Positions 5,611 through 60,664 of a DNA stretch of 64,000 nucleotides are shown one piece after another (position 1 is the stretch's first letter; each line of letters begins with the position of its first letter). Source of the stretch: Podarcis erhardii (taxonomy: Eukaryota); NCBI GenBank assembly GCA_964252035.1, contig OZ176216.1. One strand, 5' to 3'. A program made the translations under genes and the position numbers. Under the pieces are notes generated by a model. It was not told where the DNA came from, ran no database searches, and was given only the letters and a program-made list of their open reading frames with translations.

Positions 5611-5704
5611 GAAGTGTGCATGCACACGAAAGCTCATACCTAGAACTAACTCAGTTGGTCTTTAAGGTGCTACTGGAAGGAATTTTTTTATTTTGTTTTA
5701 ACCA
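5611..5704 (+). mobile_element. Truncated copy of the same Penelope-like repeat (3' half of the hammerhead only)
   Basis: 93/94 nt identical to the reverse complement of 36228-36321; lacks the CUGA core. Confidence 0.85.
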
Positions 5705-15004: not shown

Positions 15005-15134
15005 ATTGTCATGCTTAAAAAAACACAACATCTTCAATTCACGGAAGACCCTTTTGCAAGAGACCAGATTTTGGAAGACGTTGGGCATCTTTTTGAGTGC
15101 AACTCTCTTTCCATCTCGCGGATCTGTTACTGAC
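15005..15134 (-). CDS. NLK: Nemo-like kinase, second coding exon (130 nt)
   Basis: Pyrimidine tract then TTCAG|G acceptor. Completes Trp (TG+G), then SVTDPRDGKRVALKKMPNVFQNLVSCKRVFRELKMLCFFKHDN, then a GTAAGT donor at 15004. Contains the VALKK catalytic Lys and the alphaC Glu. Confidence 0.98.
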
Positions 15135-34290: not shown

Positions 34291-34953
34291 GCGATGGAGT
34301 TTGGAATTTTACTTGCCACAGGTACTCAGCCAGAGGCCATTTACAAGGTTTGACTATGCAGATGGCTGGACAGAAGTTTTGGATCAGCCTGGAAACTGCA
34401 CCCTCAAATCCTGAGGGAGTAGGAAACCACAAAGTGATTTTCCTTCTAAGCTGCTTCCATTCCATCTTTCTATCCAAACAGTTTTTTTTATTATTCCCAA
34501 ATCCTGCTGCTTCTTCATTCTTTCCTTCAACCTCACCTGTAATTACCACTATCATGCTCCTGTTGCCGCTTCTAAAGCCTGCTCCACATGATCAAGGCAC
34601 AAAGCTCTATATGCTATCCAAATATACAAATGTGGGCATGTGGGACAGGGAGAGAGAGGATTACAATAAAATTGGGTGAAATACTGGACGTGGGACCTGA
34701 CATCTTTACTGTCATGCATCCTCACTAGTCAAACTAATACCCCATAACACTCCAAATTCCTGATCACAGGTTTTCAAAATCAATCAATCAAGAGCCACAA
34801 TAGTCTCAAACTATTTTCCTTAAGCAAATAAGAAATGCTTGATTAAACAGGATCAATAGTTGATCAGAAATATTGGTAAAAAGAAACCAAATTAACTTCC
34901 CTGGACAAAGAGTTCTACATTCTGGTTGCTATGACAGGAAAAGCCCTCCATAC

Positions 34954-35316
34954 CAGTGTTCAAAATTCACCAGGTGCCAGGCACATTTTGCACCTGGTTA
35001 TTGAACACTTGTGACCAAGGGAAGATGCCCAGGTGCCAGGATGCAATCTGACATCACCATCTGGAGCTGCATGGCTGGGATTCCTTGGATCTTGATTGTT
35101 TTCACACACTAGCAACACATCCTATAGAATTACATCCAGTATATTTTATCTGCACGATCAGAATGAATTTCAGGAACCAAAACATTGTATTGAAAAATAT
35201 GACTTTTTTAGCTGTCTGGCCCCCAAATGGCAACTAGGCATTCTGTTTTGGTGACTGTATCCCTGGTTTAAGGAGCCATTTGGCACCTAGCTTATATATC
35301 TGAGTTTCTAACACTG
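34954..35316. mobile_element. hAT-like non-autonomous element, same family as 49894
   Basis: CAGTGTTCAAAATT...GTTTCTAACACTG; shares subterminal blocks (CCAGGC-ATTTTGC-CCT; ACTAG-CATTCTGTTTTGGT) with 49894-50201; TSD eroded. Confidence 0.6.
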
Positions 35317-35873
35317 CCTTACATATCCCTGCCAACCATACTTCAGAAGGTGGTAGGACGTACAGTGGGGGGAGGGGCATAGACTAGTCTTACCATACAT
35401 ATCAGGGGCATATCAAGATTTTTGGATACAAGTCTCCTGAGTTCATGAAATTATATTCCTATCTTGTTATGGTGGACAGAAGGGGTTGAAAATGTTGCCT
35501 CAAAGGCAAGGAGCAGCCATTTTAAATTTGTCTGTATAGATTTGAAGCAATCCCTTTCATTATGACAGAATTTACTTGCTCCAAGTAAGGAATGACTGTT
35601 TGCTCTGTAAAAGCACTCTAGGCTGGTGTCACTGCCAAATAGATGCTCTTTTCTATGACTAAGTACAGTGCACAAGGTAGTCATAGCCAATTTGTACTCC
35701 CTGATTCCTGCATAGGCTTTTTTCTACAATACTGGGAATGCCATGAGAAAATGCTTCTCAGTTGAATGACAGCAGACAACTTGCCTTGAACAACCTCTCC
35801 TGAATAATATACCTTTTACATTTTGAAGCTCTGGTAGGATATGAACATTAACACATCTGTAAAATGTATATCT

Positions 35874-36009
35874 CAGTGATGGCCAAACTTGGCCCTCCAG
35901 CTGTTTTGGGACTACAATTCCCATCATCCCTGACCACTGGTCCTGCTAGCTAGGGATGATGGGAGTTGTAGTCCCAAAACAGCTGGAGGACCAAGTTTGG
36001 CCATCACTG
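35874..36009. mobile_element. hAT-type palindromic MITE (136 bp), subfamily with CAGTGATGGCCAAAC ends
   Basis: Near-perfect hairpin; TSD GTATATCT/GTATAGTT (6/8). Confidence 0.88.
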
Positions 36010-36198
36010 GTATAGTTCTTTAGAGCTGAAAAGTAGTCTGGGTAAAATGGGCCTTTTCTGCGGTGACACTCACACCCTCTCAGGGGCAGGTGCGCCAACT
36101 CTAGTAGATGGAGGTGCCATCAGCCCCCTCAATATTCTTTGCAAGGGGCTAAGCCCCCCAAATATTGATGTCAGTGGTTTGAAGGAGCTCTTTTCATT

Positions 36199-36334
36199 TA
36201 CAGATAGGTAGCCGTGTTGGTCTGCCATGGTCAAAACAAAATAAAAAAATTCCTTCCAGTAGCACCTTAAAGACCAACTGAGTTAGTTCTAGGTATGAGC
36301 TTTCGTGTGCATGCACACTTCTTCAGATACCAGT
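36199..36334 (-). mobile_element. Penelope-like element terminal-repeat fragment carrying the hammerhead
   Basis: Resembles the reptile PLE terminal repeat as recalled (GAAAGCTCATACC...TTGGTCTTTAAGGTGCTAC...AACACGGCTACC). Flanked by the 10 bp direct repeat TCTTTTCATT (36189-36198, 36335-36344). Confidence 0.75.
36292..36331 (-). ncRNA. Minimal type I hammerhead ribozyme motif
   Basis: Minus strand GGTAT-CTGAAGA-A-GTGTG-CATG-CACAC-GAAA-GC-TC-ATACC: stem I GGUAU/AUACC, core CUGANGA, stem II GUGUG/CACAC, GAAA, palindromic mini stem III, UH cleavage site. Confidence 0.85.
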
Positions 36335-37266
36335 TCTTTTCATTGTAAGGCTTTTATAGGTGAATTGAGCATGTGTTTGGACCCTGGATGAGAACCCAGA
36401 GGCTTTGAGGGAGAATGTGTCATAAGGAAAATAAACTGATATTGATTTATATATATTAGTAACTCTGTATTAATTTAACTGTGCATTTTTGTAATATTTT
36501 GTTTAAGTTGCCTATTGTTGCTTCAGTTTTCTGTACACTGCTTAGAGATATTTTTAATATATTAAGCAATACAGAAGCAATCAAATAAAATGGTCAAAAT
36601 AAAGTTCTAAAACGTAACACTTACACCAATTACATCAATTAAATACAAACCACTGTTACCCCCCCCATCAGTATTTCAGTTCAATTACTTTGCTATTGCA
36701 AAAATATTTTCAGATGTTTAACATTTTGGCACTTTTAAATGTGAGTACAATCCAAAACATACTTAAATTCCATTTTTAAATCAACGGAAATAAGCATTCA
36801 GACACAGAGGCAAGTGTTTACTTTATAGTGATCTTAAATGAGACTGAAGTCAGATTTTGTATCATGCTGAATCCAAGTACCTTAGCCACTTAAAAAAACC
36901 TTAATTTCCACTGCAGCTTTAGACCATACTCCAGCTGAAGGTTGTTCATCAAGAAACTGTCCTTATCCTTTTCTTTCTATATCCTGCCTATAGAGATGGG
37001 ATGAATATATTAACAGACAAAGGAAAAACAAAAGAAAACCCATGTCTTACAATTATAATTAGACATCTGGGACCTGTAAGCTGCAATTTCCCCAGCTAAA
37101 TATTTTTCTTTCTTGCCACTGAGGTGGCAAATCCAAGGATTTTGGATTGATCACTAGCAGTGTGGCCATACAAGCAACTACAGAGAGCCGCTTTTTTTCT
37201 TAAAAGAAAAGCTGTCTACCAAAAGGATGCAGACCTAGTTAACACATTGCATTACAGTTTAAAATA

Positions 37267-37620
37267 AAGGTAAAGGTACCCCTGCCTGTACGGGCCAGTC
37301 TTGACAGACTCTAGGGTTGTGCGCTCATCTCACTCTATAGGCCGGAAGCCAGCGCTGTCCACAGACACTTCCGGGTCACTTGGCCAGCGTGACAAGCTGC
37401 ATCTGGCGAGCCAGCGCAGCACACGGAACGCCGTTTACCTTCCCGTTGGTAAGCGGTCCCTATTTATCTACTTGCACCCGGGGGTGCTTTCGAACTGCTA
37501 GGTTGGCAGGCGCTGGGACCGAACGACGGGAGCGCACCCCGCCGCGGGGATTCGAACCGCCGACCATGCAATCGGCAAGTCCTAAGCGCTGAGGTTTTAC
37601 CCACAGCGCCACCCGCGTCA
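37267..37620 (-). mobile_element. Full-length Sauria-type tRNA-derived SINE
   Basis: A box TGGCGCTGTGG (37611-37601), B box GGTTCGAATCC (37558-37548), (ACCTTT)n tail, 13 bp TSD ACAGTTTAAAATA (37254-37266, 37621-37633). Confidence 0.88.
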
Positions 37621-38199
37621 ACAGTTTAAAATAGTAAATACTAAAGTAGGATTTTAGTCTCTTTAGCAAAAAAATCACCCTCAACAACATGCACACATTT
37701 GACAAGCGCTCACACTTTCAAAACTTGGAATTAGTTTTAATACAACCTGTTCACACCATTTGATTCATGGACTTAGGATCTGCTGGGACTGACAGAGCTG
37801 AAAGATGTCTAATGCATGTGAATATGTTGTTACAAAAGTTGGGTGCCTGCCCCTCTTCCTGCCAAGCGGTGGCAGGAGCCCATGGGGTCCCAGGCACCCA
37901 TACAAGGTCTGTGTTCCTTTGAAGGATGGAAGACCCTGAGGAGACTGTTGGGACTTTAAGAAATATGGTTTATTCACCTATTTACACTTTCAGTCTGCAT
38001 GGAGGGAGTCCATATCTTATGGCATAGTCATTTCAAGAGCCAGCAGCGCAGGCAGCCTTCAGCCTGTCTGTCCAAGATGAATCTCAGCCTTTCTTCCTCC
38101 TCTTTCCTTCCAGCAACCCTTGCCCCAGCCCAGCAGTTACCCTGGCAACCGTCCAAATCCCCAGTCTCTGTTCACACCTGGGACAAGGGGGAAGAAGTG

Positions 38200-38480
38200 A
38201 GTTTGTTTGTTTATTGACCGACTGACTTTACATACCACCCTATACCCACAGGTTTCAGGGCAGTTCAAAGAATAAAATCAAAATATAAAACCACAAAATA
38301 CACAATTAACATCATGTAGATGTTAAACAACATAGGGGATAGGATTGAGCCCTGCGGAACCCAACATTGAAGGTTCCACCAGGCTGAAAAGCATTCTCCA
38401 AGCAACACCCTCTGGGAACGACCATCCAAGTAAGACTGGAACCACCACAAAGTGGTGCCACTCACCCCTAGTTCAGACAG
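38200..38480 (-). mobile_element. L2/CR1-clade LINE relic: RT segment joined directly to a 3' tail
   Basis: 38306-38480 translates LSELGVSGTTLWWFQSYLDGRSQRVLLGECFSAWWNLQCWVPQGSILSPMLFNIYM (RT PQGS motif); 38200-38305 resembles a LINE 3' terminus. Confidence 0.8.
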
Positions 38481-38487
38481 CTGCTCC

Positions 38488-38567
38488 GGAAGGAAGAAGA
38501 AGAAGAAGAAGAAGAAGAAGAAGAAGAAGAAGAAGAAGAAGAGGAGGAGGAGGAGGAGGAGGAGGAG
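38488..38567. repeat. Compound microsatellite, about (GAA)16(GAG)9
   Basis: Read directly; it is the tail of the adjacent SINE. Confidence 0.95.
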
Positions 38568-38670
38568 TTTGGATTTGATATCCCGCTTTATCACTACCCT
38601 AAGGTTAACAATCTCCTTTCCCTTCCTCCGCCGCAACACTCTGTGAGGTGCGCGAGGCTGAGAGACTTCA
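38568..38670 (-). mobile_element. 5'-truncated squamate SINE 3' part
   Basis: TTTGGATTTGATATCCCGCTTTATCACTACCC...CACTCTGTGAGGTG...GGCTGAGAGACTTCAGAG. Confidence 0.7.
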
Positions 38671-41600
38671 GAGGATACCATGTTCGATGGTACCGAAAGC
38701 CACTGAGAGGTCAAGAAGAATTAACAGGGTCATGTTTCCCTTCTCTCTCCCTAGAGTCTGGACAGGGCAACCAAAGCAGTTTCTGTGCCAAAATCGGGCC
38801 TATCCTCTCGCCCCCCATTGAAATGGATGCAGAAAATCAGTTTCTTCCAAGGCTCCTGGATCTGGTCTCCTGTACTGTTAATGTCCCACAATTGCTCTTT
38901 TGATAGTCGCAGCACTGCCAGGTTGTTTTGCATTAGCTTAGCCTAGGAATTCCTTTGCAGCTTTCATTCTCCCTTCATATCACAAGTAACAGAAATCCTA
39001 GCATTTAGTAATTTCTAGGGTGTAGGGGGATCCCTCCCCCAATCTATAAAACCATTGAAAAAATCCCCTACCATGAGTCTGTGTTAACAGGAAACACAAA
39101 ATAAATGGGTTAAGCAACTTGCACTGCACACTATACTTCAAAGGTAATCTTCATTCACATCTCACTCAGCTGCCAACTGCAGCCATCTCCAGAGCTTCTT
39201 TTCAACTGAAGATAGCATTAAAAGGCCCTTTAGAATGCATTCTAATCAACTCTGCAAGCTTATGCACCATTACCAGTTATTCTTTTTTTAATTAAAAAAA
39301 AACAATGCTAAAAGCAAAAATGATTATTAACTCTAGGAAGGAAAGGAAATTAAAGTGATATTCTCACAGCCAACATCTTCTAAAAATGTTTCATTTGCTC
39401 TTGTTCTAGGAAGCTTCAAAGCAGAAAGACTTTTCTAAATCAAGATTTTATTTATTCTTTCAAAAGCTCTTTTCATTCTTAGCTTTCTAATTCGCTTTAT
39501 GAATCACAACACACTGAGTACTATATCTTTTTAAAAGCAAAAACTCTTAAGAGAGCAAGTTACTGTGAATAGATACAGATACAATTTTTATGTATGTTAT
39601 TTCACTGGACTTTTACTTTTTTCCTTGATTTTTTTTTTCTCTGAAAGTCAAATAATGGACTTACCAATCATTAATGGCACACACCTAGAGAGACTCAGTA
39701 GGTAAATAAGGAATTGTTCAGAATGGGTGTACCAGCTCCTGCAGCAGCACATCAAAATATACTGCACAATTTGGATGTGGGCACACTTTCGGGATTTGCC
39801 ATCTGATATGCAAGCAGTGTGCAGGCCCTCCAATGCAAATTAAAGCAGTAAACTGAGAAGAAGCCACTCAAAATTTTAAGAGTGCTGCATGATGGCTGTT
39901 TGAATTGGTACTATCCACAACCCACAGAGTTGAAACTATATTTCAAATTCCTACGGTCCAACACCTGACCTTTAGGGTGGTATCCCCCACCAGATTTGGG
40001 GGAGAAGAGAAAGAACTTTCCAGGAAGTTTTGAGCCTCCTTTGCTAACTTCATATTTTAACAAAACTTTAGAGAGCCAGGAGACCACAAACCTAAGGTTT
40101 TGTTTCCAGCTCATCCCATGTACAAAAGAATAAGTGTTGGGCAATGCAGTATCTCACAGAGATTAGTCAAAGGCTCCTGCCCATTATGTCACAACCCAGC
40201 TGAAGGGAAAAGCCTAGTCTCAGGATGTTCAAATGTCCATTTCCAGCCATATCTCCACTAAAAGCAGCTTTTTGCTTATTTTGGGCATTGGCCCTCCATG
40301 CAAAAGAGCCCAGGTTTACATAAAAAGAGTATAAGGAAGACAATGGCAACAAGAGTAGATGATACTGGGAGATGTCATCCAAAATGAAGGTACCTTATTC
40401 CAAGTCAGACTGTTGGTCTATTTAGGCCAGTATAATTCATTCTCATTGACAGAGGCTGCTCCATATTCTATTTACATCATTATGCCAGGGATTGAACCTA
40501 GAACCTTATGCCCCAGAGGACCCTCATAGGGAAGAAATGACATAAAAAAGAGGGGGGAAAGGTAGTGTATCTGCCCAGACTTCATCTGAACTTGGGTGGC
40601 AGAAGGGAAACAGAAGTTCTTTCCAGGTTACCAAACACAGTATGGTTGGATGCTTCTGGATCTCATTTCTAGGCAGGGCAGAGTATAGGTTGAAACTTGT
40701 AAGCAAAGTGGTTTGGAAAGTAGCATCACAGGTTAAAGCAACTTCAAAATGGATATGAGACACCCCACAATACAGTACAGATACAACATGATGTCACTTG
40801 CTTTAGACTACGCTTGATCTGCACAATATGTTCTGACCAAAGCATTTGTTTACTTGAATCCCTAAACGATAAGTAGTTTGGAGGTGAAACGATGACATTA
40901 ATCTTGTTCCAAACATAGGCTGCCATCCTCATGCTATTTAATTGTTTGAAGTCCTGTTGAAATGTATGCTTTAACAGAAAAGTTTTAAAAATCCAATAAT
41001 CCTTATTTGCAGATCTCAATACCTTTACCATTCCCTCCATCCAATAATTTGCAGATTGGCATTTTTTTATGCCAGCTGCAAATTCAAGACAACTGACTTA
41101 TTTAATCCAATACAGTAGCTTAAATGAACACTCCCCAACCATCTTCTTCCCCTCCACAGTTGAAAACTAATTCTAACCCATATTTATCTTTGTATGAGAC
41201 ACCAAGGCAATTTGACTTAAAAACAAAAGAAAAAACTGCATACACTGTCAGCTATTTCCTCCGCCATTCAAACCCTACTCCCCTGCAAAAACCAGAAACC
41301 TAGCAGACGTTTTCCTAATGCTACCTGGATCTGGCAGCTTCAGTCAAAGGATGCTCTGGCATGAGAGCATGAGATATTGAAGTTATCTGAGATACCACAT
41401 GATTTGTACTTGTACAAATTGGAGCTATCTGGGTGACCAGAGTCAGCAGTTACCTGGTGTGGTTGCTAGGATAAAGAAACATGAGCTCTAGACAAGCATA
41501 TAGTAGCTAGGAGCCAGCTGTTCAGCAGATGCATTAATCTTCAGCAAACAGATTTCATTCCTTATTCATCTCTTTATTAGAGGCCTCAAAGAATATTTCC

Positions 41601-48928: not shown

Positions 48929-49055
48929 CAGAATCATAGAATTGTAGAGTTGAAAGGGACACTAAGAGTCATCAAGTCCAACCCCCTAGGTGGGCTTGAA
49001 CCAACAACCTTCTGGTTAACAGTCAGAAACACTGACCCATTATGCTGCAGGAGGG
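48929..49055 (-). mobile_element. tRNA-derived SINE with a CR1-type tail
   Basis: AGAATCATAGAATTGTAGAGTTGAAAGGGAC tail; GGGCTTGAACC reversed B-box-like motif. Confidence 0.65.
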
Positions 49056-57523: not shown

Positions 57524-60209
57524 TACCACAATTCTACACTGAAAAAATAACATTCTGCAACAGACAGATTCACCAGTTATATCCTTTTAAACATCATTCT
57601 ACATGGGTGGGCTACACTGGATCAGAAATTTCCAGCATCAAAAATTGTTTGCTTACATGAACAAGCCAACTTTACACTACTCTCAAACACATTTGCAGCT
57701 GAACTTTCAGTGTTCAGCTCTAATTTAAATGACAGACCTCAACAGAGTTCAGAATTATCACTTACACAGCATTTCAGTTACAAGTTTCTAGCCACATACA
57801 CTACAAAATTTAGCATGTGTTGTGCCTCTGAAAAGATGTGAAGTAAGATAATGAGGGCCTTTTATAACTTATTTGAAAAACTGGTGGTGTTAACTTTGCA
57901 TTTAAGAAAACTCACTGTATTTTTTAAAAAGCAACCAGAACATCTTTTATGGGCTTCCACTCCTCCATCAATTACTTTACCTTAACCAAGTGCTGATGGA
58001 AAGTGTAACTAAGGCTGCAACCTAAATAGATATAAAGTCCCATTCAACTAAGTACTTCTTTCTTAGAATTATACTATGAATGAGCTGCTGTAATTTTTAT
58101 ATCATTCTCTTATAAGAAAAGCTACTCAATTTGAAAATGTTTTATTTCTGTTCCTGTCAACCTGAACACACTCCTTGCCAATTATTCTAGATTTTGATCC
58201 TGCCCAAAGCATCTACACTAAAAATAATGCAATCATATTTTTCAATAAATAGCATATAACTAGAACTGCAAAAATGCAATTCACAGGTAGTAAGTCTTAC
58301 TAAATTCAATGAGAGCTACTTCCAACTAGACATCCCTAGGATTCACTGTTAAGATTCTCATTCACAGCATTTATTAAATAGTCTGCAGTAAAGTATAATC
58401 CAAGAAGAGGATAGACAGCTATAAATCTTAATTTTTAATTCCAGAAGTGGTATAAGAAACACAGAATATACACTTGACAGAAATCAAATCATTAACTTGG
58501 AAGCATTCACTAATTACAAAAAGATTCATCTTAGGCCCTTAGCCGTTCCCTGCTTAAGTAACACTTCTATGCTGAAACCTGTTTAAGCAATACATTTGTA
58601 TGATACTATCAGTTACCAGTCTAAATCCAACTGTGCCTTAGCTGTCAAAACCACTCTACTCCACAGCACTCTATTACAGCACATATTAATCCAGTGAATC
58701 ATAGCATTAATACATGCAATGATTTTAGTTCAGCTAAGTGAAAACTACAGCATGACAGCTGAGGCAAGCAAAGCATTCCTTAAAGTACAAAAGAGGATTT
58801 TTTGCTGATTCAAGAATTGTTATCCTGGTGGTAAGAATACAATACAAACAGGGGGTAGCTTTTTATTGGATCAATTTCCTGCACAAATGAAAACCTCTCC
58901 CCTTATACATTTTGTGCCTCTTACATTCAATGGGCCACATGACTGTTTAGCTCAATGCAAGAAAAGTTACAAATACAATCCAAATCCATTTTATAAATGT
59001 CTACATAGATTTTTGGTTAACACTCTGCTTTGATACCAAGACAGGGATAATTTCCCTCTTTTAAAGCCATTCTTAAACAAGGCCAAGGAGAGAGTCATTA
59101 AAACATTTTGTTTCCTACACAAGGCTCCCAGGGTTTTGTAGCTATGACGGCCCATGCCAAAGCAAAGCAAGATGAAAAAAAAAAATCTGAATGAAGTGCA
59201 AAGTCCTAAGATAACTTTTAGGAAATACATTGTGTGATACTGCAGGGGAAATGCAGACTCTAGTCACCTGCCAAAACCAAGAGTCCAAAAGAAATTGCTT
59301 CCAACTCCAGTCACTGGATTGAGAAACCAACTTTTCTCCATTTGCATTTAAGACACACATGAATGAAATTCTATTACTATAAAAAATGGCATTCTGATGC
59401 AACCCAAGCTACTGACCTCTAAAACACATAATAAATGCTTCGGCAGTAGCAGCAGAATGTTTTGGAAAACCTAAGCAGCTTGTATTTGTCTCAAGACAAT
59501 GATGTCGGACATAATCCAAGCCAATTTAGGTTGCAATTTTACACTCACTCACCTGGGGCTGCAAATAAGTCCCACTGAATGCAATGGGACTAACTTGCAT
59601 AGGATTGCACTGTTGAGCTGCAGCTATAGAAGAAGCAAGAGCAAACCACCTACTGCACAGGAGTAGGCAAGGACCTGCAAGTACCAAGAATGCCAGCTTC
59701 CACATTTTTAAATAAAGTTTTTTTGCCCTCCAATAGGAGAGAAGGCGAGGGGAATAAAGTTTGGAAATGTAGACAAGGCCCTAAATGGTAAAAATCCAAG
59801 AAATCCAAATGAATTAAAGTTATGAAATACAGATGTGCAAATTCACCTTACTATTTCTCCAGGAACTGATCCATTTTTTCTAGGTACACAAGTGACAACC
59901 TGATGACAATCATTACAGCAAAAAGGTAGCAACATTTTGTTTTGATACCTGCCACAATAACAGAAACACTTCATTCGTGTTAACTATGTGCCACTAAACA
60001 CACATACAAGTTGAAGCTCCCCAGCTCATACATTTCTAATGCACTTTCTAATCTCCCTTTTTCTGCTGGGGGTGGACACCATCTGCTACAGACTTGAACA
60101 GGCACCTGTTGAAAAGTAGCGTGTTGGCATTCAAGTTCAAATGGCAACAGGAATATGCTGTGGCTTGGAAGCCACCAGAGTGCAAGAGCTGTTTGCTCCT
60201 CATACTCAC

Positions 60210-60664
60210 CAAACTACACCAAAGGCTCCATATCCAATAGGCCTGTCTGGTTCAATATCCAGTTGCTGTTGTGGATGATGCGAGTGCTGATGATGGTGCG
60301 CTTTGACTGCAGCAGCTGCTGCAGCTTGTACCTGAGCTGGGGCTGCTGCTGCTGGTCCAGGGGCTTGACCTGGTGCCGGTGATGGAAAATATGGCTGCTG
60401 CTGCCCTGGGTTTAACATGGCTGCAGCGGCCGCAGCTGCGGCTGCAGCAGCAGCCGAAGAAGCATGTTGCTGTACGGGATGTACTGCAGCCGCAGAGCCT
60501 GGGTGCAAGTGGTGCTGAGAGTGGTGGTGGTGATGGAGATGAGGAGGGGGGAGATGAGGAAGGTGGTGGTGGTGGTGGTGGTGGTGACCTGCTGCTGCTG
60601 CAGATGTACCGCCATTGTAAGCCGCCATCATTTTTGCGCTGGCTGTGGCACTACAAAGAGACAT
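60210..60664 (-). CDS. NLK: Nemo-like kinase, first coding exon (455 nt; His/Ala-rich N-terminus and kinase Gly-rich loop)
   Basis: Translates MSLCSATASAKMMAAYNGGTSAAAAGHHHHHHHHLPH...LDIEPDRPIGYGAFGVVW, matching vertebrate NLK as recalled. Ends TG|GTGAGT (donor at 60209, phase 2). Confidence 0.98.

What the first reader, a model, noticed from the sequence alone, without database searches (positions are those of the whole stretch)
36292..36331. Intact minimal hammerhead ribozyme on the NLK sense strand in intron 1
Seen: the minus strand reads GGUAU CUGAAGA A GUGUG-CAUG-CACAC GAAA GC UC|AUACC. All core nucleotides are present, stem I has 5 bp and stem II has 5 bp. The predicted cut lies between 36297 and 36296. 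Established: Penelope-like retroelements carry minimal type I hammerheads whose palindromic stem III (here A-GC-U) generally needs dimerisation for efficient cleavage. Inference: every NLK pre-mRNA transcribes this motif, so it could be a weak or dimer-dependent co-transcriptional cleavage site in a 45 kb intron. The motif class is known; this insertion is probably unannotated.
Basis: partly seen in the sequence, partly recalled or inferred. Interest (0 to 1): 0.75.

Follow-up and report, generated by a model that had tools for sequence, protein, structure and literature searches.

The report
Penelope retrotransposon hammerhead in NLK intron
The hammerhead-ribozyme motif is real, but it is the head of a very young, roughly 135-base copy of a hugely abundant lizard Penelope-like retrotransposon that related lizards lack at this site, so it is an ordinary mobile-element relic and probably not a working cut site in the NLK gene.

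Summary
Observation confirmed. The minus strand at 36331..36292 reads exactly as reported, and NLK is on the minus strand, so the motif is sense in its ~45 kb intron 1. A strict descriptor finds this one site in the window and none in 300 shuffles.

It is a textbook Penelope-like-element (PLE) minimal hammerhead. It has an extra base between A9 and helix II, a G10.1-C11.1 pair, a palindromic 15.2-16.2 and a 5-bp open helix I. It heads a 133-136 nt insertion (36334..36199) flanked by a 10-bp target-site duplication.

Contigs from three related taxa join 36188 directly to 36335. The insertion is therefore lineage-specific and not conserved. Summed contig depth over the element is about 10^4-fold above the unique flanks. 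A 99%-identical truncated copy lies at 5611-5704(+). This scan already holds 153 hammerhead/Penelope notes on other DNA of this genome.

Cleavage of NLK pre-mRNA is unsupported:
- The copy is single and helix III cannot form in a monomer.
- The modelled double hammerhead (-20.1 kcal/mol) is less stable than two monomers (-23.2) or a dimer through palindromic helix II (-40.2).
- Published PLE minimal hammerheads show no monomer cleavage.
- The Anolis one cleaves only with PLE protein and leaves no RNA-seq ends.

No raw-read run was listed (only contigs), and no run holding the stretch is on record as RNA. Known class, ordinary member, low interest.

The parts
36292..36331 (-). Minimal type I hammerhead motif. 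Helix I 36331-36327/36296-36292; core CUGAAGA 36326-36320; bulged A 36319; helix II 36318-36314/36309-36305 with loop CAUG 36313-36310; GAA 36304-36302; A15.1-G-C-U16.1 36301-36298; C17 36297. Predicted cut between 36297 and 36296.
   Evidence: Sequence read. The strict descriptor gives a unique hit and 0 hits in 300 shuffles. The monomer minimum-free-energy fold forms helices I and II.
36199..36334 (-). Whole Penelope-like mini-insertion of 133-136 nt, running from the hammerhead to the 3' 'tail'. The 5' limit is ambiguous by 3 nt (36334 or 36331).
   Evidence: Contigs of organisms B, C and E join 36188 directly to 36335 (table 8, records 20, 27, 5). Flanking direct repeats spaced 146 nt apart. 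Summed contig depth is about 4-5 million over 36214-36314 against about 50-200 in the unique flanks (table 2).
36335..36344 (-). Upstream copy of the target-site duplication AATGAAAAGA. It extends to 13 nt with one mismatch if 36332-36334 are counted.
36189..36198 (-). Downstream copy of the target-site duplication AATGAAAAGA, at an AT-rich target.
   Evidence: Only one copy is present in the empty-site contigs.
36199..36227 (-). Optional 29-nt 'tail' carrying the AC-rich block (CAGACCAACACGG). It is present in this copy and absent from the copy at 5611-5704.
   Evidence: Alignment and blastn. This matches the two internal reverse-transcription start sites and the 30-40 bp optional tail described for PLEs in PMC11167929. 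The match is an inference.
5611..5704 (+). Second copy of the same family, 98.9% identical over 94 nt. It is 5'-truncated inside the hammerhead (no helix I 5' strand, no CUGA) and ends at the shorter 3' site. It is antisense to NLK and lies downstream of exon 2, i.e. beyond intron 1.
60206..60664 (-). NLK exon 1 coding part: His/Ala-rich N-terminus ending in the glycine loop GYGAFGVVW.
   Evidence: ORF list. Identification as NLK rests on my own knowledge of the protein; there was no Pfam hit on this piece.
15005..15133 (-). NLK exon 2 (SVTDPRDGKRVALKK...FFKHDNV), which sets the 3' end of intron 1.
   Evidence: Six-frame search. Weak Pkinase match at profile positions 20-59, E=0.061.

Best explanation
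This is a solo, recently retrotransposed mini-copy (133-136 nt) of a very abundant lizard Penelope-like element. The copied RNA ran from about the start of the element's minimal hammerhead to the distal of two internal reverse-transcription start sites in an AC-rich segment. It was inserted by target-primed reverse transcription into an AT-rich site in NLK intron 1, creating a 10-bp duplication. The hammerhead belongs to the retrotransposon's own RNA biology. In NLK pre-mRNA it is a passenger. As a single copy it cannot build helix III, so it is expected to cleave not at all or negligibly, and the intron is removed normally. Shown here: the motif, the element limits, the duplication, absence at the orthologous site in three related taxa, high copy number, and sense orientation. 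Inferred: the PLE mobilisation mechanism and the lack of cleavage.
For: Motif and coordinates. Not chance: (1 hit against 0 in 300 shuffles). [quoted passage not shown] The Anolis Poseidon_Ac consensus has the same layout across its tandem junction: CTGAGGA, a bulged T, a G...C helix II, GAAA, CG, TC. Direct repeats spaced 146 nt apart. Empty sites in organisms B, C and E, each on a contig with 129-216 letters on both sides: table 8. Summed depth about 10^4-fold over the unique flanks: table 2. A second, 99%-identical copy is truncated at the 5' end and ends 29 nt earlier at the 3' end, as expected from 5' truncation and the two RT start sites (PMC11167929). Modelled energies are -20.1 kcal/mol for the double hammerhead, -23.2 for two monomers and -40.2 for a dimer through the 14-nt palindromic helix II. 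Helix I probability drops from above 0.84 to 0.06 when the context is widened from +-100 to +-200 nt. Literature: the single motif showed no detectable cleavage and dimers only low cleavage (PMC4209133); the Anolis PLE hammerhead was inactive without PLE protein, and no RNA-seq reads began or ended at its cut site (PMC11167929).
Against: No cleavage assay or RNA-end data exist for this copy or this family. All listed runs were assembled contigs and none holding the stretch is on record as RNA, so in vivo cleavage is not excluded. Nearest-neighbour energies ignore the tertiary contacts of the hammerhead core. Association of this family with an RT/GIY-YIG ORF was not seen in this window and rests on motif architecture, literature and unchecked earlier scan notes. 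All core bases are intact and the copy is young, so nothing in the sequence itself disables catalysis.
Confidence: 0.85

Rival explanations
1. One reading: the motif acts as a weak, dimer-dependent co-transcriptional cleavage site in NLK pre-mRNA. It would pair in trans with another RNA carrying the same AGCU helix III, such as other pre-mRNAs or PLE transcripts, and so lower NLK output.
For: The core is intact and on the sense strand. The family is extremely abundant, so partner RNAs could exist. Dimeric PLE minimal hammerheads show some cleavage in vitro (PMC4209133).
Against: There is no second sense copy in the window. The only other copy is antisense and lacks the 5' half of the motif. 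The double hammerhead is modelled as less stable than two monomers and much less stable than a non-catalytic dimer through helix II. Published dimer activity was low and mostly seen at non-physiological Mg2+. The insertion is absent in three related taxa, so there is no conserved role.
Confidence: 0.06
2. Protein-assisted cleavage: in cells that express the active PLE protein, the protein binds the copy's RT-initiation segment and folds the hammerhead into an active form. NLK pre-mRNA would then be cut only in those cells, for example in the germ line.
For: The Anolis Poseidon hammerhead cleaved only when PLE protein was present, and C3G/G8C compensation showed the RNA itself is the catalyst (PMC11167929). 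This mini-copy carries both the hammerhead and the AC-rich tail. The family looks recently active: copies are 99% identical and this insertion is lineage-specific.
Against: In that study the minimal RNA extended to +172, past the RT start sites at 111-118. Genomic copies end at those start sites, so by analogy this copy probably lacks part of the required RNA. The same study found no RNA-seq ends at the hammerhead site in vivo. This family differs from Poseidon_Ac: the hammerhead-to-tail segment has stops in all three frames and shows no obvious sequence similarity by eye to the consensus.
Confidence: 0.08
3. A chance match to the hammerhead consensus with no relation to any ribozyme.
For: No Rfam hammerhead model scores it. 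The loose consensus pattern is as frequent as chance. The fold z-score is only -1.6.
Against: The strict descriptor gives 0 hits in 300 shuffles. The motif sits at the head of a multi-copy mobile element with a target-site duplication. It carries features not required by the core, namely the bulged base, G10.1-C11.1 and palindromic 15.2-16.2, which are typical of PLE hammerheads.
Confidence: 0.01

Closest known systems
Minimal hammerheads (min-HHR) of metazoan Penelope-like elements (Cervera & de la Pena 2014, PMC4209133)
   Same: Type I layout with an open helix I of 5 bp. One unpaired nucleotide between A9 and 10.1. A G10.1-C11.1 closing pair. No loop 3 and a palindromic 15.2-16.2 (GC). Present as dispersed single copies of a high-copy family. 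Reported in reptiles.
   Different: Helix II has 5 bp plus a tetraloop, against 6-8 bp in the described Schistosoma and Drosophila families. Helix II with its loop is a perfect 14-nt palindrome, which favours a non-catalytic dimer in the model. No activity data exist for this family.
Poseidon_Ac (PAc) of Anolis carolinensis, the only PLE reconstituted in vitro (Frangieh et al. 2024, PMC11167929)
   Same: A lizard PLE with the same hammerhead architecture, as read from the consensus. Genomic copies end at internal RT start sites in an AC-rich segment roughly 90-125 nt past the ribozyme core. An optional tail of about 30 nt. An AT-rich target.
   Different: A different family with no obvious sequence similarity by eye to the PAc consensus. 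In PAc the ORF starts at helix II, whereas here the hammerhead-to-tail segment has stops in all three frames. Cleavage was shown for PAc only, and only with PLE protein.
Conserved intronic hammerheads of amniotes (Rfam HH9/HH10; de la Pena & Garcia-Robles 2010, cited in PMC4209133)
   Same: A type I hammerhead on the sense strand of an intron of a protein-coding gene.
   Different: Those have helix III and loop-loop tertiary contacts, are active as monomers and are conserved across orders. This one has no loops and no Rfam hit, and it is missing from the orthologous site in three related taxa.
Animal non-LTR retrozymes (Cervera & de la Pena 2020, PMC7229834; Li et al. 2026 preprint, 10.64898/2026.07.22.740005)
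   Same: Short, non-coding, hammerhead-bearing units related to PLE pLTRs. Monomer derivatives are scattered through genomes, including introns.
   Different: Retrozymes are tandem repeats that can form double hammerheads and circular RNAs. This locus is a single unit with a target-site duplication.

Membership tests
Hammerhead ribozyme (catalytic core) | Conserved core C3 U4 G5 A6 N7 G8 A9 / G12 A13 A14 / A15.1-U16.1 and H17 | tested here: met
   CUGAAGA at 36326-36320, GAA at 36304-36302, A15.1 at 36301, U16.1 at 36298, C17 at 36297.
Hammerhead ribozyme (catalytic core) | Three helices around the core within one molecule | tested here: not met
   Helices I and II (5 bp each) form. Helix III would be A-G-C-U with no loop, so it cannot close within a monomer.
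Hammerhead ribozyme (catalytic core) | Match to curated Rfam hammerhead covariance models | tested here: not met
   No hammerhead family appears at E<=10 on 5 kb or on 131 nt, nor at gathering score on the whole window.
Hammerhead ribozyme (catalytic core) | Site-specific self-cleavage | not testable with these tools
   Only assembled contigs were available and no raw RNA reads. A bench assay is needed.
PLE minimal hammerhead (min-HHR) | [quoted passage not shown] | tested here: met
   A at 36319. The criterion comes from PMC4209133.
PLE minimal hammerhead (min-HHR) | G10.1-C11.1 pair and palindromic 15.2-16.2 | tested here: met
   G36318 pairs with C36305. G36300 and C36299 are self-complementary.
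PLE minimal hammerhead (min-HHR) | Belongs to a multi-copy consensus family in the genome | tested here: met
   A second copy at 99% identity. Summed contig depth about 10^4-fold above the flanks in four runs.
Penelope-like element insertion | Retrotransposed copy with a target-site duplication and a precise empty site | tested here: met
   10-bp duplication. Empty-site contigs in organisms B, C and E.
Penelope-like element insertion | 3' ends at alternative internal RT start sites (optional ~30-40 bp tail) in an AC-rich segment | tested here: inconclusive
   Two copies end 29 nt apart and the longer one carries CAGACCAACACGG. Two copies are too few to define family termini.
Penelope-like element insertion | Family linked to an ORF with RT and GIY-YIG endonuclease domains | not testable with these tools
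   I did not search the window for a PLE ORF. The one metagenome scan returned only an unrelated contig that looks bacterial, a chance match. Other parts of this genome cannot be read here.
Conserved intronic hammerhead (HH9/HH10 type) | Orthologous conservation across species | tested here: not met
   The insertion is absent from contigs of three related taxa that cover both flanks.
Non-LTR retrozyme | Tandem head-to-tail units giving two hammerheads in one transcript | tested here: not met
   A single unit at this locus. No other full motif occurs in 64 kb.

The most novel reading that the evidence does not exclude
The intact mini-copy (hammerhead plus RT-initiation tail) could be a conditional cut site. 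In cells where the active Penelope-like element expresses its protein or abundant hammerhead-bearing RNA, NLK pre-mRNA would be cleaved at 36297/36296 by protein-assisted or trans-dimer catalysis. With thousands of similar sense-strand intronic copies, transposon activity would then be coupled to host-gene attenuation.
Probability: 0.05. Interest if true: 0.55.

Novelty: new member of a known kind. Interest (0 to 1): 0.12.

Why it matters
This locus matters little on its own. It is one of a very large number of copies of a known motif class, and related lizards do without it. Its use is as a clean example: it has exact limits, a target-site duplication, an empty site in sister taxa and an intact core. 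That makes it a convenient natural construct for two open questions. One is whether vertebrate PLE minimal hammerheads cleave at all in vivo. The other is whether sense-strand intronic copies carry any cost. A genome-wide orientation bias of such copies in introns would answer the second question better than this locus can.

Tried and rejected
- **Rfam scans.** Scans at E<=10 on 5 kb and on 131 nt, and at gathering score on the whole window, gave no hammerhead hit. I do not read this as evidence against the motif, because the curated models expect a helix III and loops that PLE minimal hammerheads lack.
- **Loose pattern.** The loose consensus pattern is uninformative: 6 matches against 5.4 expected.
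- **Metagenome scan.** A scan with a 19-nt block of the element, meant to fetch a full-length PLE or further copies, returned one high-GC contig that looks bacterial and has a chance match (L001). It was discarded. The RT/GIY-YIG link and covariation across copies therefore could not be tested.
- **Sequencing runs.** No run holding the stretch is on record as RNA and none is kept as raw reads. RNA starts, ends and levels could not be examined. The 'RNA?' run X15 covers the repeats heavily and the unique intron hardly at all, which says nothing about NLK.
- **Chance origin.** Rejected.
- **Retrozyme or tandem arrangement at this locus.** Rejected.
- **ARAGORN.** It found no tRNA gene in the window.

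Full report
**1. Is the motif there?**

Yes. One search gives the minus strand 36331..36292 as GGTAT CTGAAGA A GTGTG CATG CACAC GAAA GC TC ATACC. In hammerhead numbering:
- Helix I is 36331-36327 paired with 36296-36292 (5 bp).
- C3-A9 is 36326-36320.
- One extra A sits at 36319.
- Helix II is 36318-36314 paired with 36309-36305 (5 bp, G10.1-C11.1), with loop CAUG.
- G12 A13 A14 is 36304-36302.
- A15.1 G15.2 C16.2 U16.1 is 36301-36298, and C17 is 36297.

A loose consensus pattern is no rarer than chance, with 6 matches against 5.4 expected. I therefore wrote a strict descriptor: core, optional bulge, helix I and helix II of at least 4 bp each, and a self-complementary helix III. It finds only this site on either strand of the 64 kb. 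It finds nothing in 300 dinucleotide-preserving shuffles.

No Rfam hammerhead model reports the site, even at E<=10 on a 131-nt slice. This fits a motif that lacks helix III and both loops.

**2. Strand and gene**

The ORF 60664..60206(-) encodes the His/Ala-rich N-terminus ending in GYGAFGVVW. I recognise this as NLK exon 1 from my own knowledge. The next coding piece (SVTDPRDGKRVALKK...FFKHDNV) lies at about 15133..15005(-). It gives a weak protein-kinase match at profile positions 20-59.

NLK is therefore on the minus strand and intron 1 is about 45 kb. The motif is sense, about 24 kb into the intron. The exons were searched separately by reference, and the joined sequence was not built.

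**3. What carries the motif**

The motif is the head of a short insertion. Direct repeats AATGAAAAGA lie at 36344-36335 and 36198-36189 on the minus strand. They extend to 13 nt with one mismatch, so the 5' limit is 36334 or 36331 and the element is 133-136 nt long.

Laying contigs of four public runs on 34800-37800 gave three results.

- **Empty sites.** In organisms B, C and E, one contig per run covers both flanks and joins 36188 directly to 36335. These are records 20, 27 and 5, with 129-216 letters on each side and few differences on these pieces (0-7 other letters per piece). This is the empty site carrying a single copy of the duplicated decamer. The insertion is thus specific to the lineage of the window's source and is evolutionarily very young.
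- **Abundance.** Summed contig depth over 36214-36314 is about 4-5 million in the large runs, against roughly 50-200 in the unique flanks. This is not a copy number, but it shows a hugely repeated family.
- **Shared 5' boundary.** Many contigs of other copies part from the window at 36330. Some go on into a TATA-containing block or into a further unit (tables 5c and 7). The head of the hammerhead is therefore a common 5' boundary of the family.

Within the window a second copy lies at 5611-5704(+), 98.9% identical over 94 nt. It starts inside the hammerhead, so it lacks the helix I 5' strand and CUGA. It ends 29 nt before the end of the first copy.

**4. Which known kind**

Cervera and de la Pena (PMC4209133) defined the minimal hammerheads of metazoan Penelope-like elements (PLEs). 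Beyond the core boxes they listed four features:
- an unpaired nucleotide between 9 and 10.1;
- a conserved G10.1-C11.1 pair;
- palindromic 15.2-16.2 with little or no loop 3;
- a short helix I of 4-5 bp.

They also reported dispersed single copies in large families, including in reptiles. Every sequence feature is met here.

The Anolis Poseidon_Ac consensus printed in the supplement of Frangieh et al. (PMC11167929) shows the same layout across its tandem junction: CTGAGGA, a bulged T, a G...C helix II, GAAA, CG, TC. The sequence family, however, is different.

That paper also shows that PLE reverse transcription starts at two internal sites in an AC-rich stem-loop about 111-118 nt past the ORF start. 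This start is close to the hammerhead. The paper explains the optional 30-40 bp 'tail' of genomic copies this way. The two copies here end 93 and 122 nt past A9, which is 29 nt apart. The longer one carries CAGACCAACACGG. I read this as the same tail dimorphism, but two copies cannot prove it.

No RT/GIY-YIG ORF of this family could be examined. I did not search the window for one.

Earlier notes of this scan describe the same ~132-nt hammerhead-headed units and a TATA block in front of the ribozyme elsewhere in this genome. I treated them as leads. My one search agrees with them on the shared 5' boundary and on the TATA-containing upstream block.

**5. Does it cut NLK pre-mRNA?**

Nothing supports this, and several things speak against it.

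- **Helix III.** It is A-G-C-U with no loop and cannot close in a monomer.
- **No cis partner.** The only other copy in the window is antisense and lacks half of the motif, so a cis dimer is impossible.
- **Dimer energetics.** For two 47-nt copies, the double hammerhead with an intermolecular AGCU helix III scores -20.1 kcal/mol. Two separate monomers score -23.2. A dimer through the perfectly palindromic 14-nt helix II scores -40.2 and has no helix III. The model ignores tertiary contacts, so this is only indicative.
- **Sensitivity to context.** Helices I and II form with probability above 0.84 in a +-100 nt context. Helix I falls to 0.06 in a +-200 nt context.
- **Published assays.** A single PLE minimal hammerhead gave no detectable cleavage. 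Dimers gave low cleavage, mostly at non-physiological Mg2+. The Anolis PLE hammerhead was inactive unless PLE protein was added, and no RNA-seq reads began or ended at its site.
- **No conservation.** Three related taxa lack the insertion.

From my own knowledge, only fast-cleaving ribozymes placed in introns have been reported to disturb co-transcriptional processing.

No raw RNA reads were available. In vivo cleavage is therefore unlikely but not excluded.

**6. Verdict**

The classification as a PLE minimal hammerhead on the NLK sense strand is supported. The proposed role as a co-transcriptional cleavage site is unsupported.

The best explanation is an inert, very young PLE mini-insertion (confidence 0.85). 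The remaining probability goes to three rivals: protein-assisted cleavage in cells expressing the PLE (0.08), trans-dimer cleavage (0.06) and chance (0.01).

The class is well described, and this scan already holds 153 hammerhead/Penelope notes on other DNA of this genome. Interest is therefore low.

Noticed in passing
window 5611-5704 (+) with 36228-36321 (-): In NLK pre-mRNA the downstream copy is read antisense. It could pair with the intron 1 copy over 94 nt (modelled duplex -168.8 kcal/mol), covering helix II, GAAA, the cut site and the 3' strand of helix I. The two copies lie about 30.6 kb apart and in different introns, so the pairing may never occur. If it did, it would be a long dsRNA and a possible editing substrate.
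   Followed up: partly
window 35849-36033: A near-perfect ~185-nt palindromic hairpin. It scores below threshold against several miRNA-precursor models, including mir-5408 and mir-3160, on both strands. It has the highest summed contig depth in the stretch, about 10^7. It is most likely a very abundant MITE-like repeat and not a miRNA gene.
   Followed up: partly
window 37265-37620: A GC-rich element of about 350 nt with very high depth in all four runs. On the minus strand it carries a tRNA-like box (GGTTCGAATCCCCGC), which suggests a squamate tRNA-derived SINE.
   Followed up: no
window 48981-49054 (-): Rfam tRNA hit above gathering score (41.8 bits) that ARAGORN does not call. It is probably the tRNA-like head of a SINE and not a tRNA gene.
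   Followed up: partly
window 38265-38714 (-): An ORF containing a reverse-transcriptase-like stretch (…QGSILSPMLFNIYM…) next to a long simple repeat. It looks like a fragment of a LINE, unrelated to the Penelope copy.
   Followed up: no
table 5c, joints at 36330 to 36198: Contigs of other copies join a unit's 3' end to the next unit's hammerhead through a spacer of about 25 nt. Read on the element's strand, the spacer contains TTTTATATAA about 15 nt before the hammerhead. Other joints show inverted head-to-head arrangements.
   Followed up: partly
window 36227-36199 (-): The tail begins just after an ATG in good context (GACCATGGC at 36231-36223). The frame from that ATG stays open to the end of the copy, whereas the hammerhead-to-ATG segment has stops in all frames. 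In this family the ORF may start here and not at helix II as in Poseidon_Ac. This could not be tested without a full-length copy.
   Followed up: no
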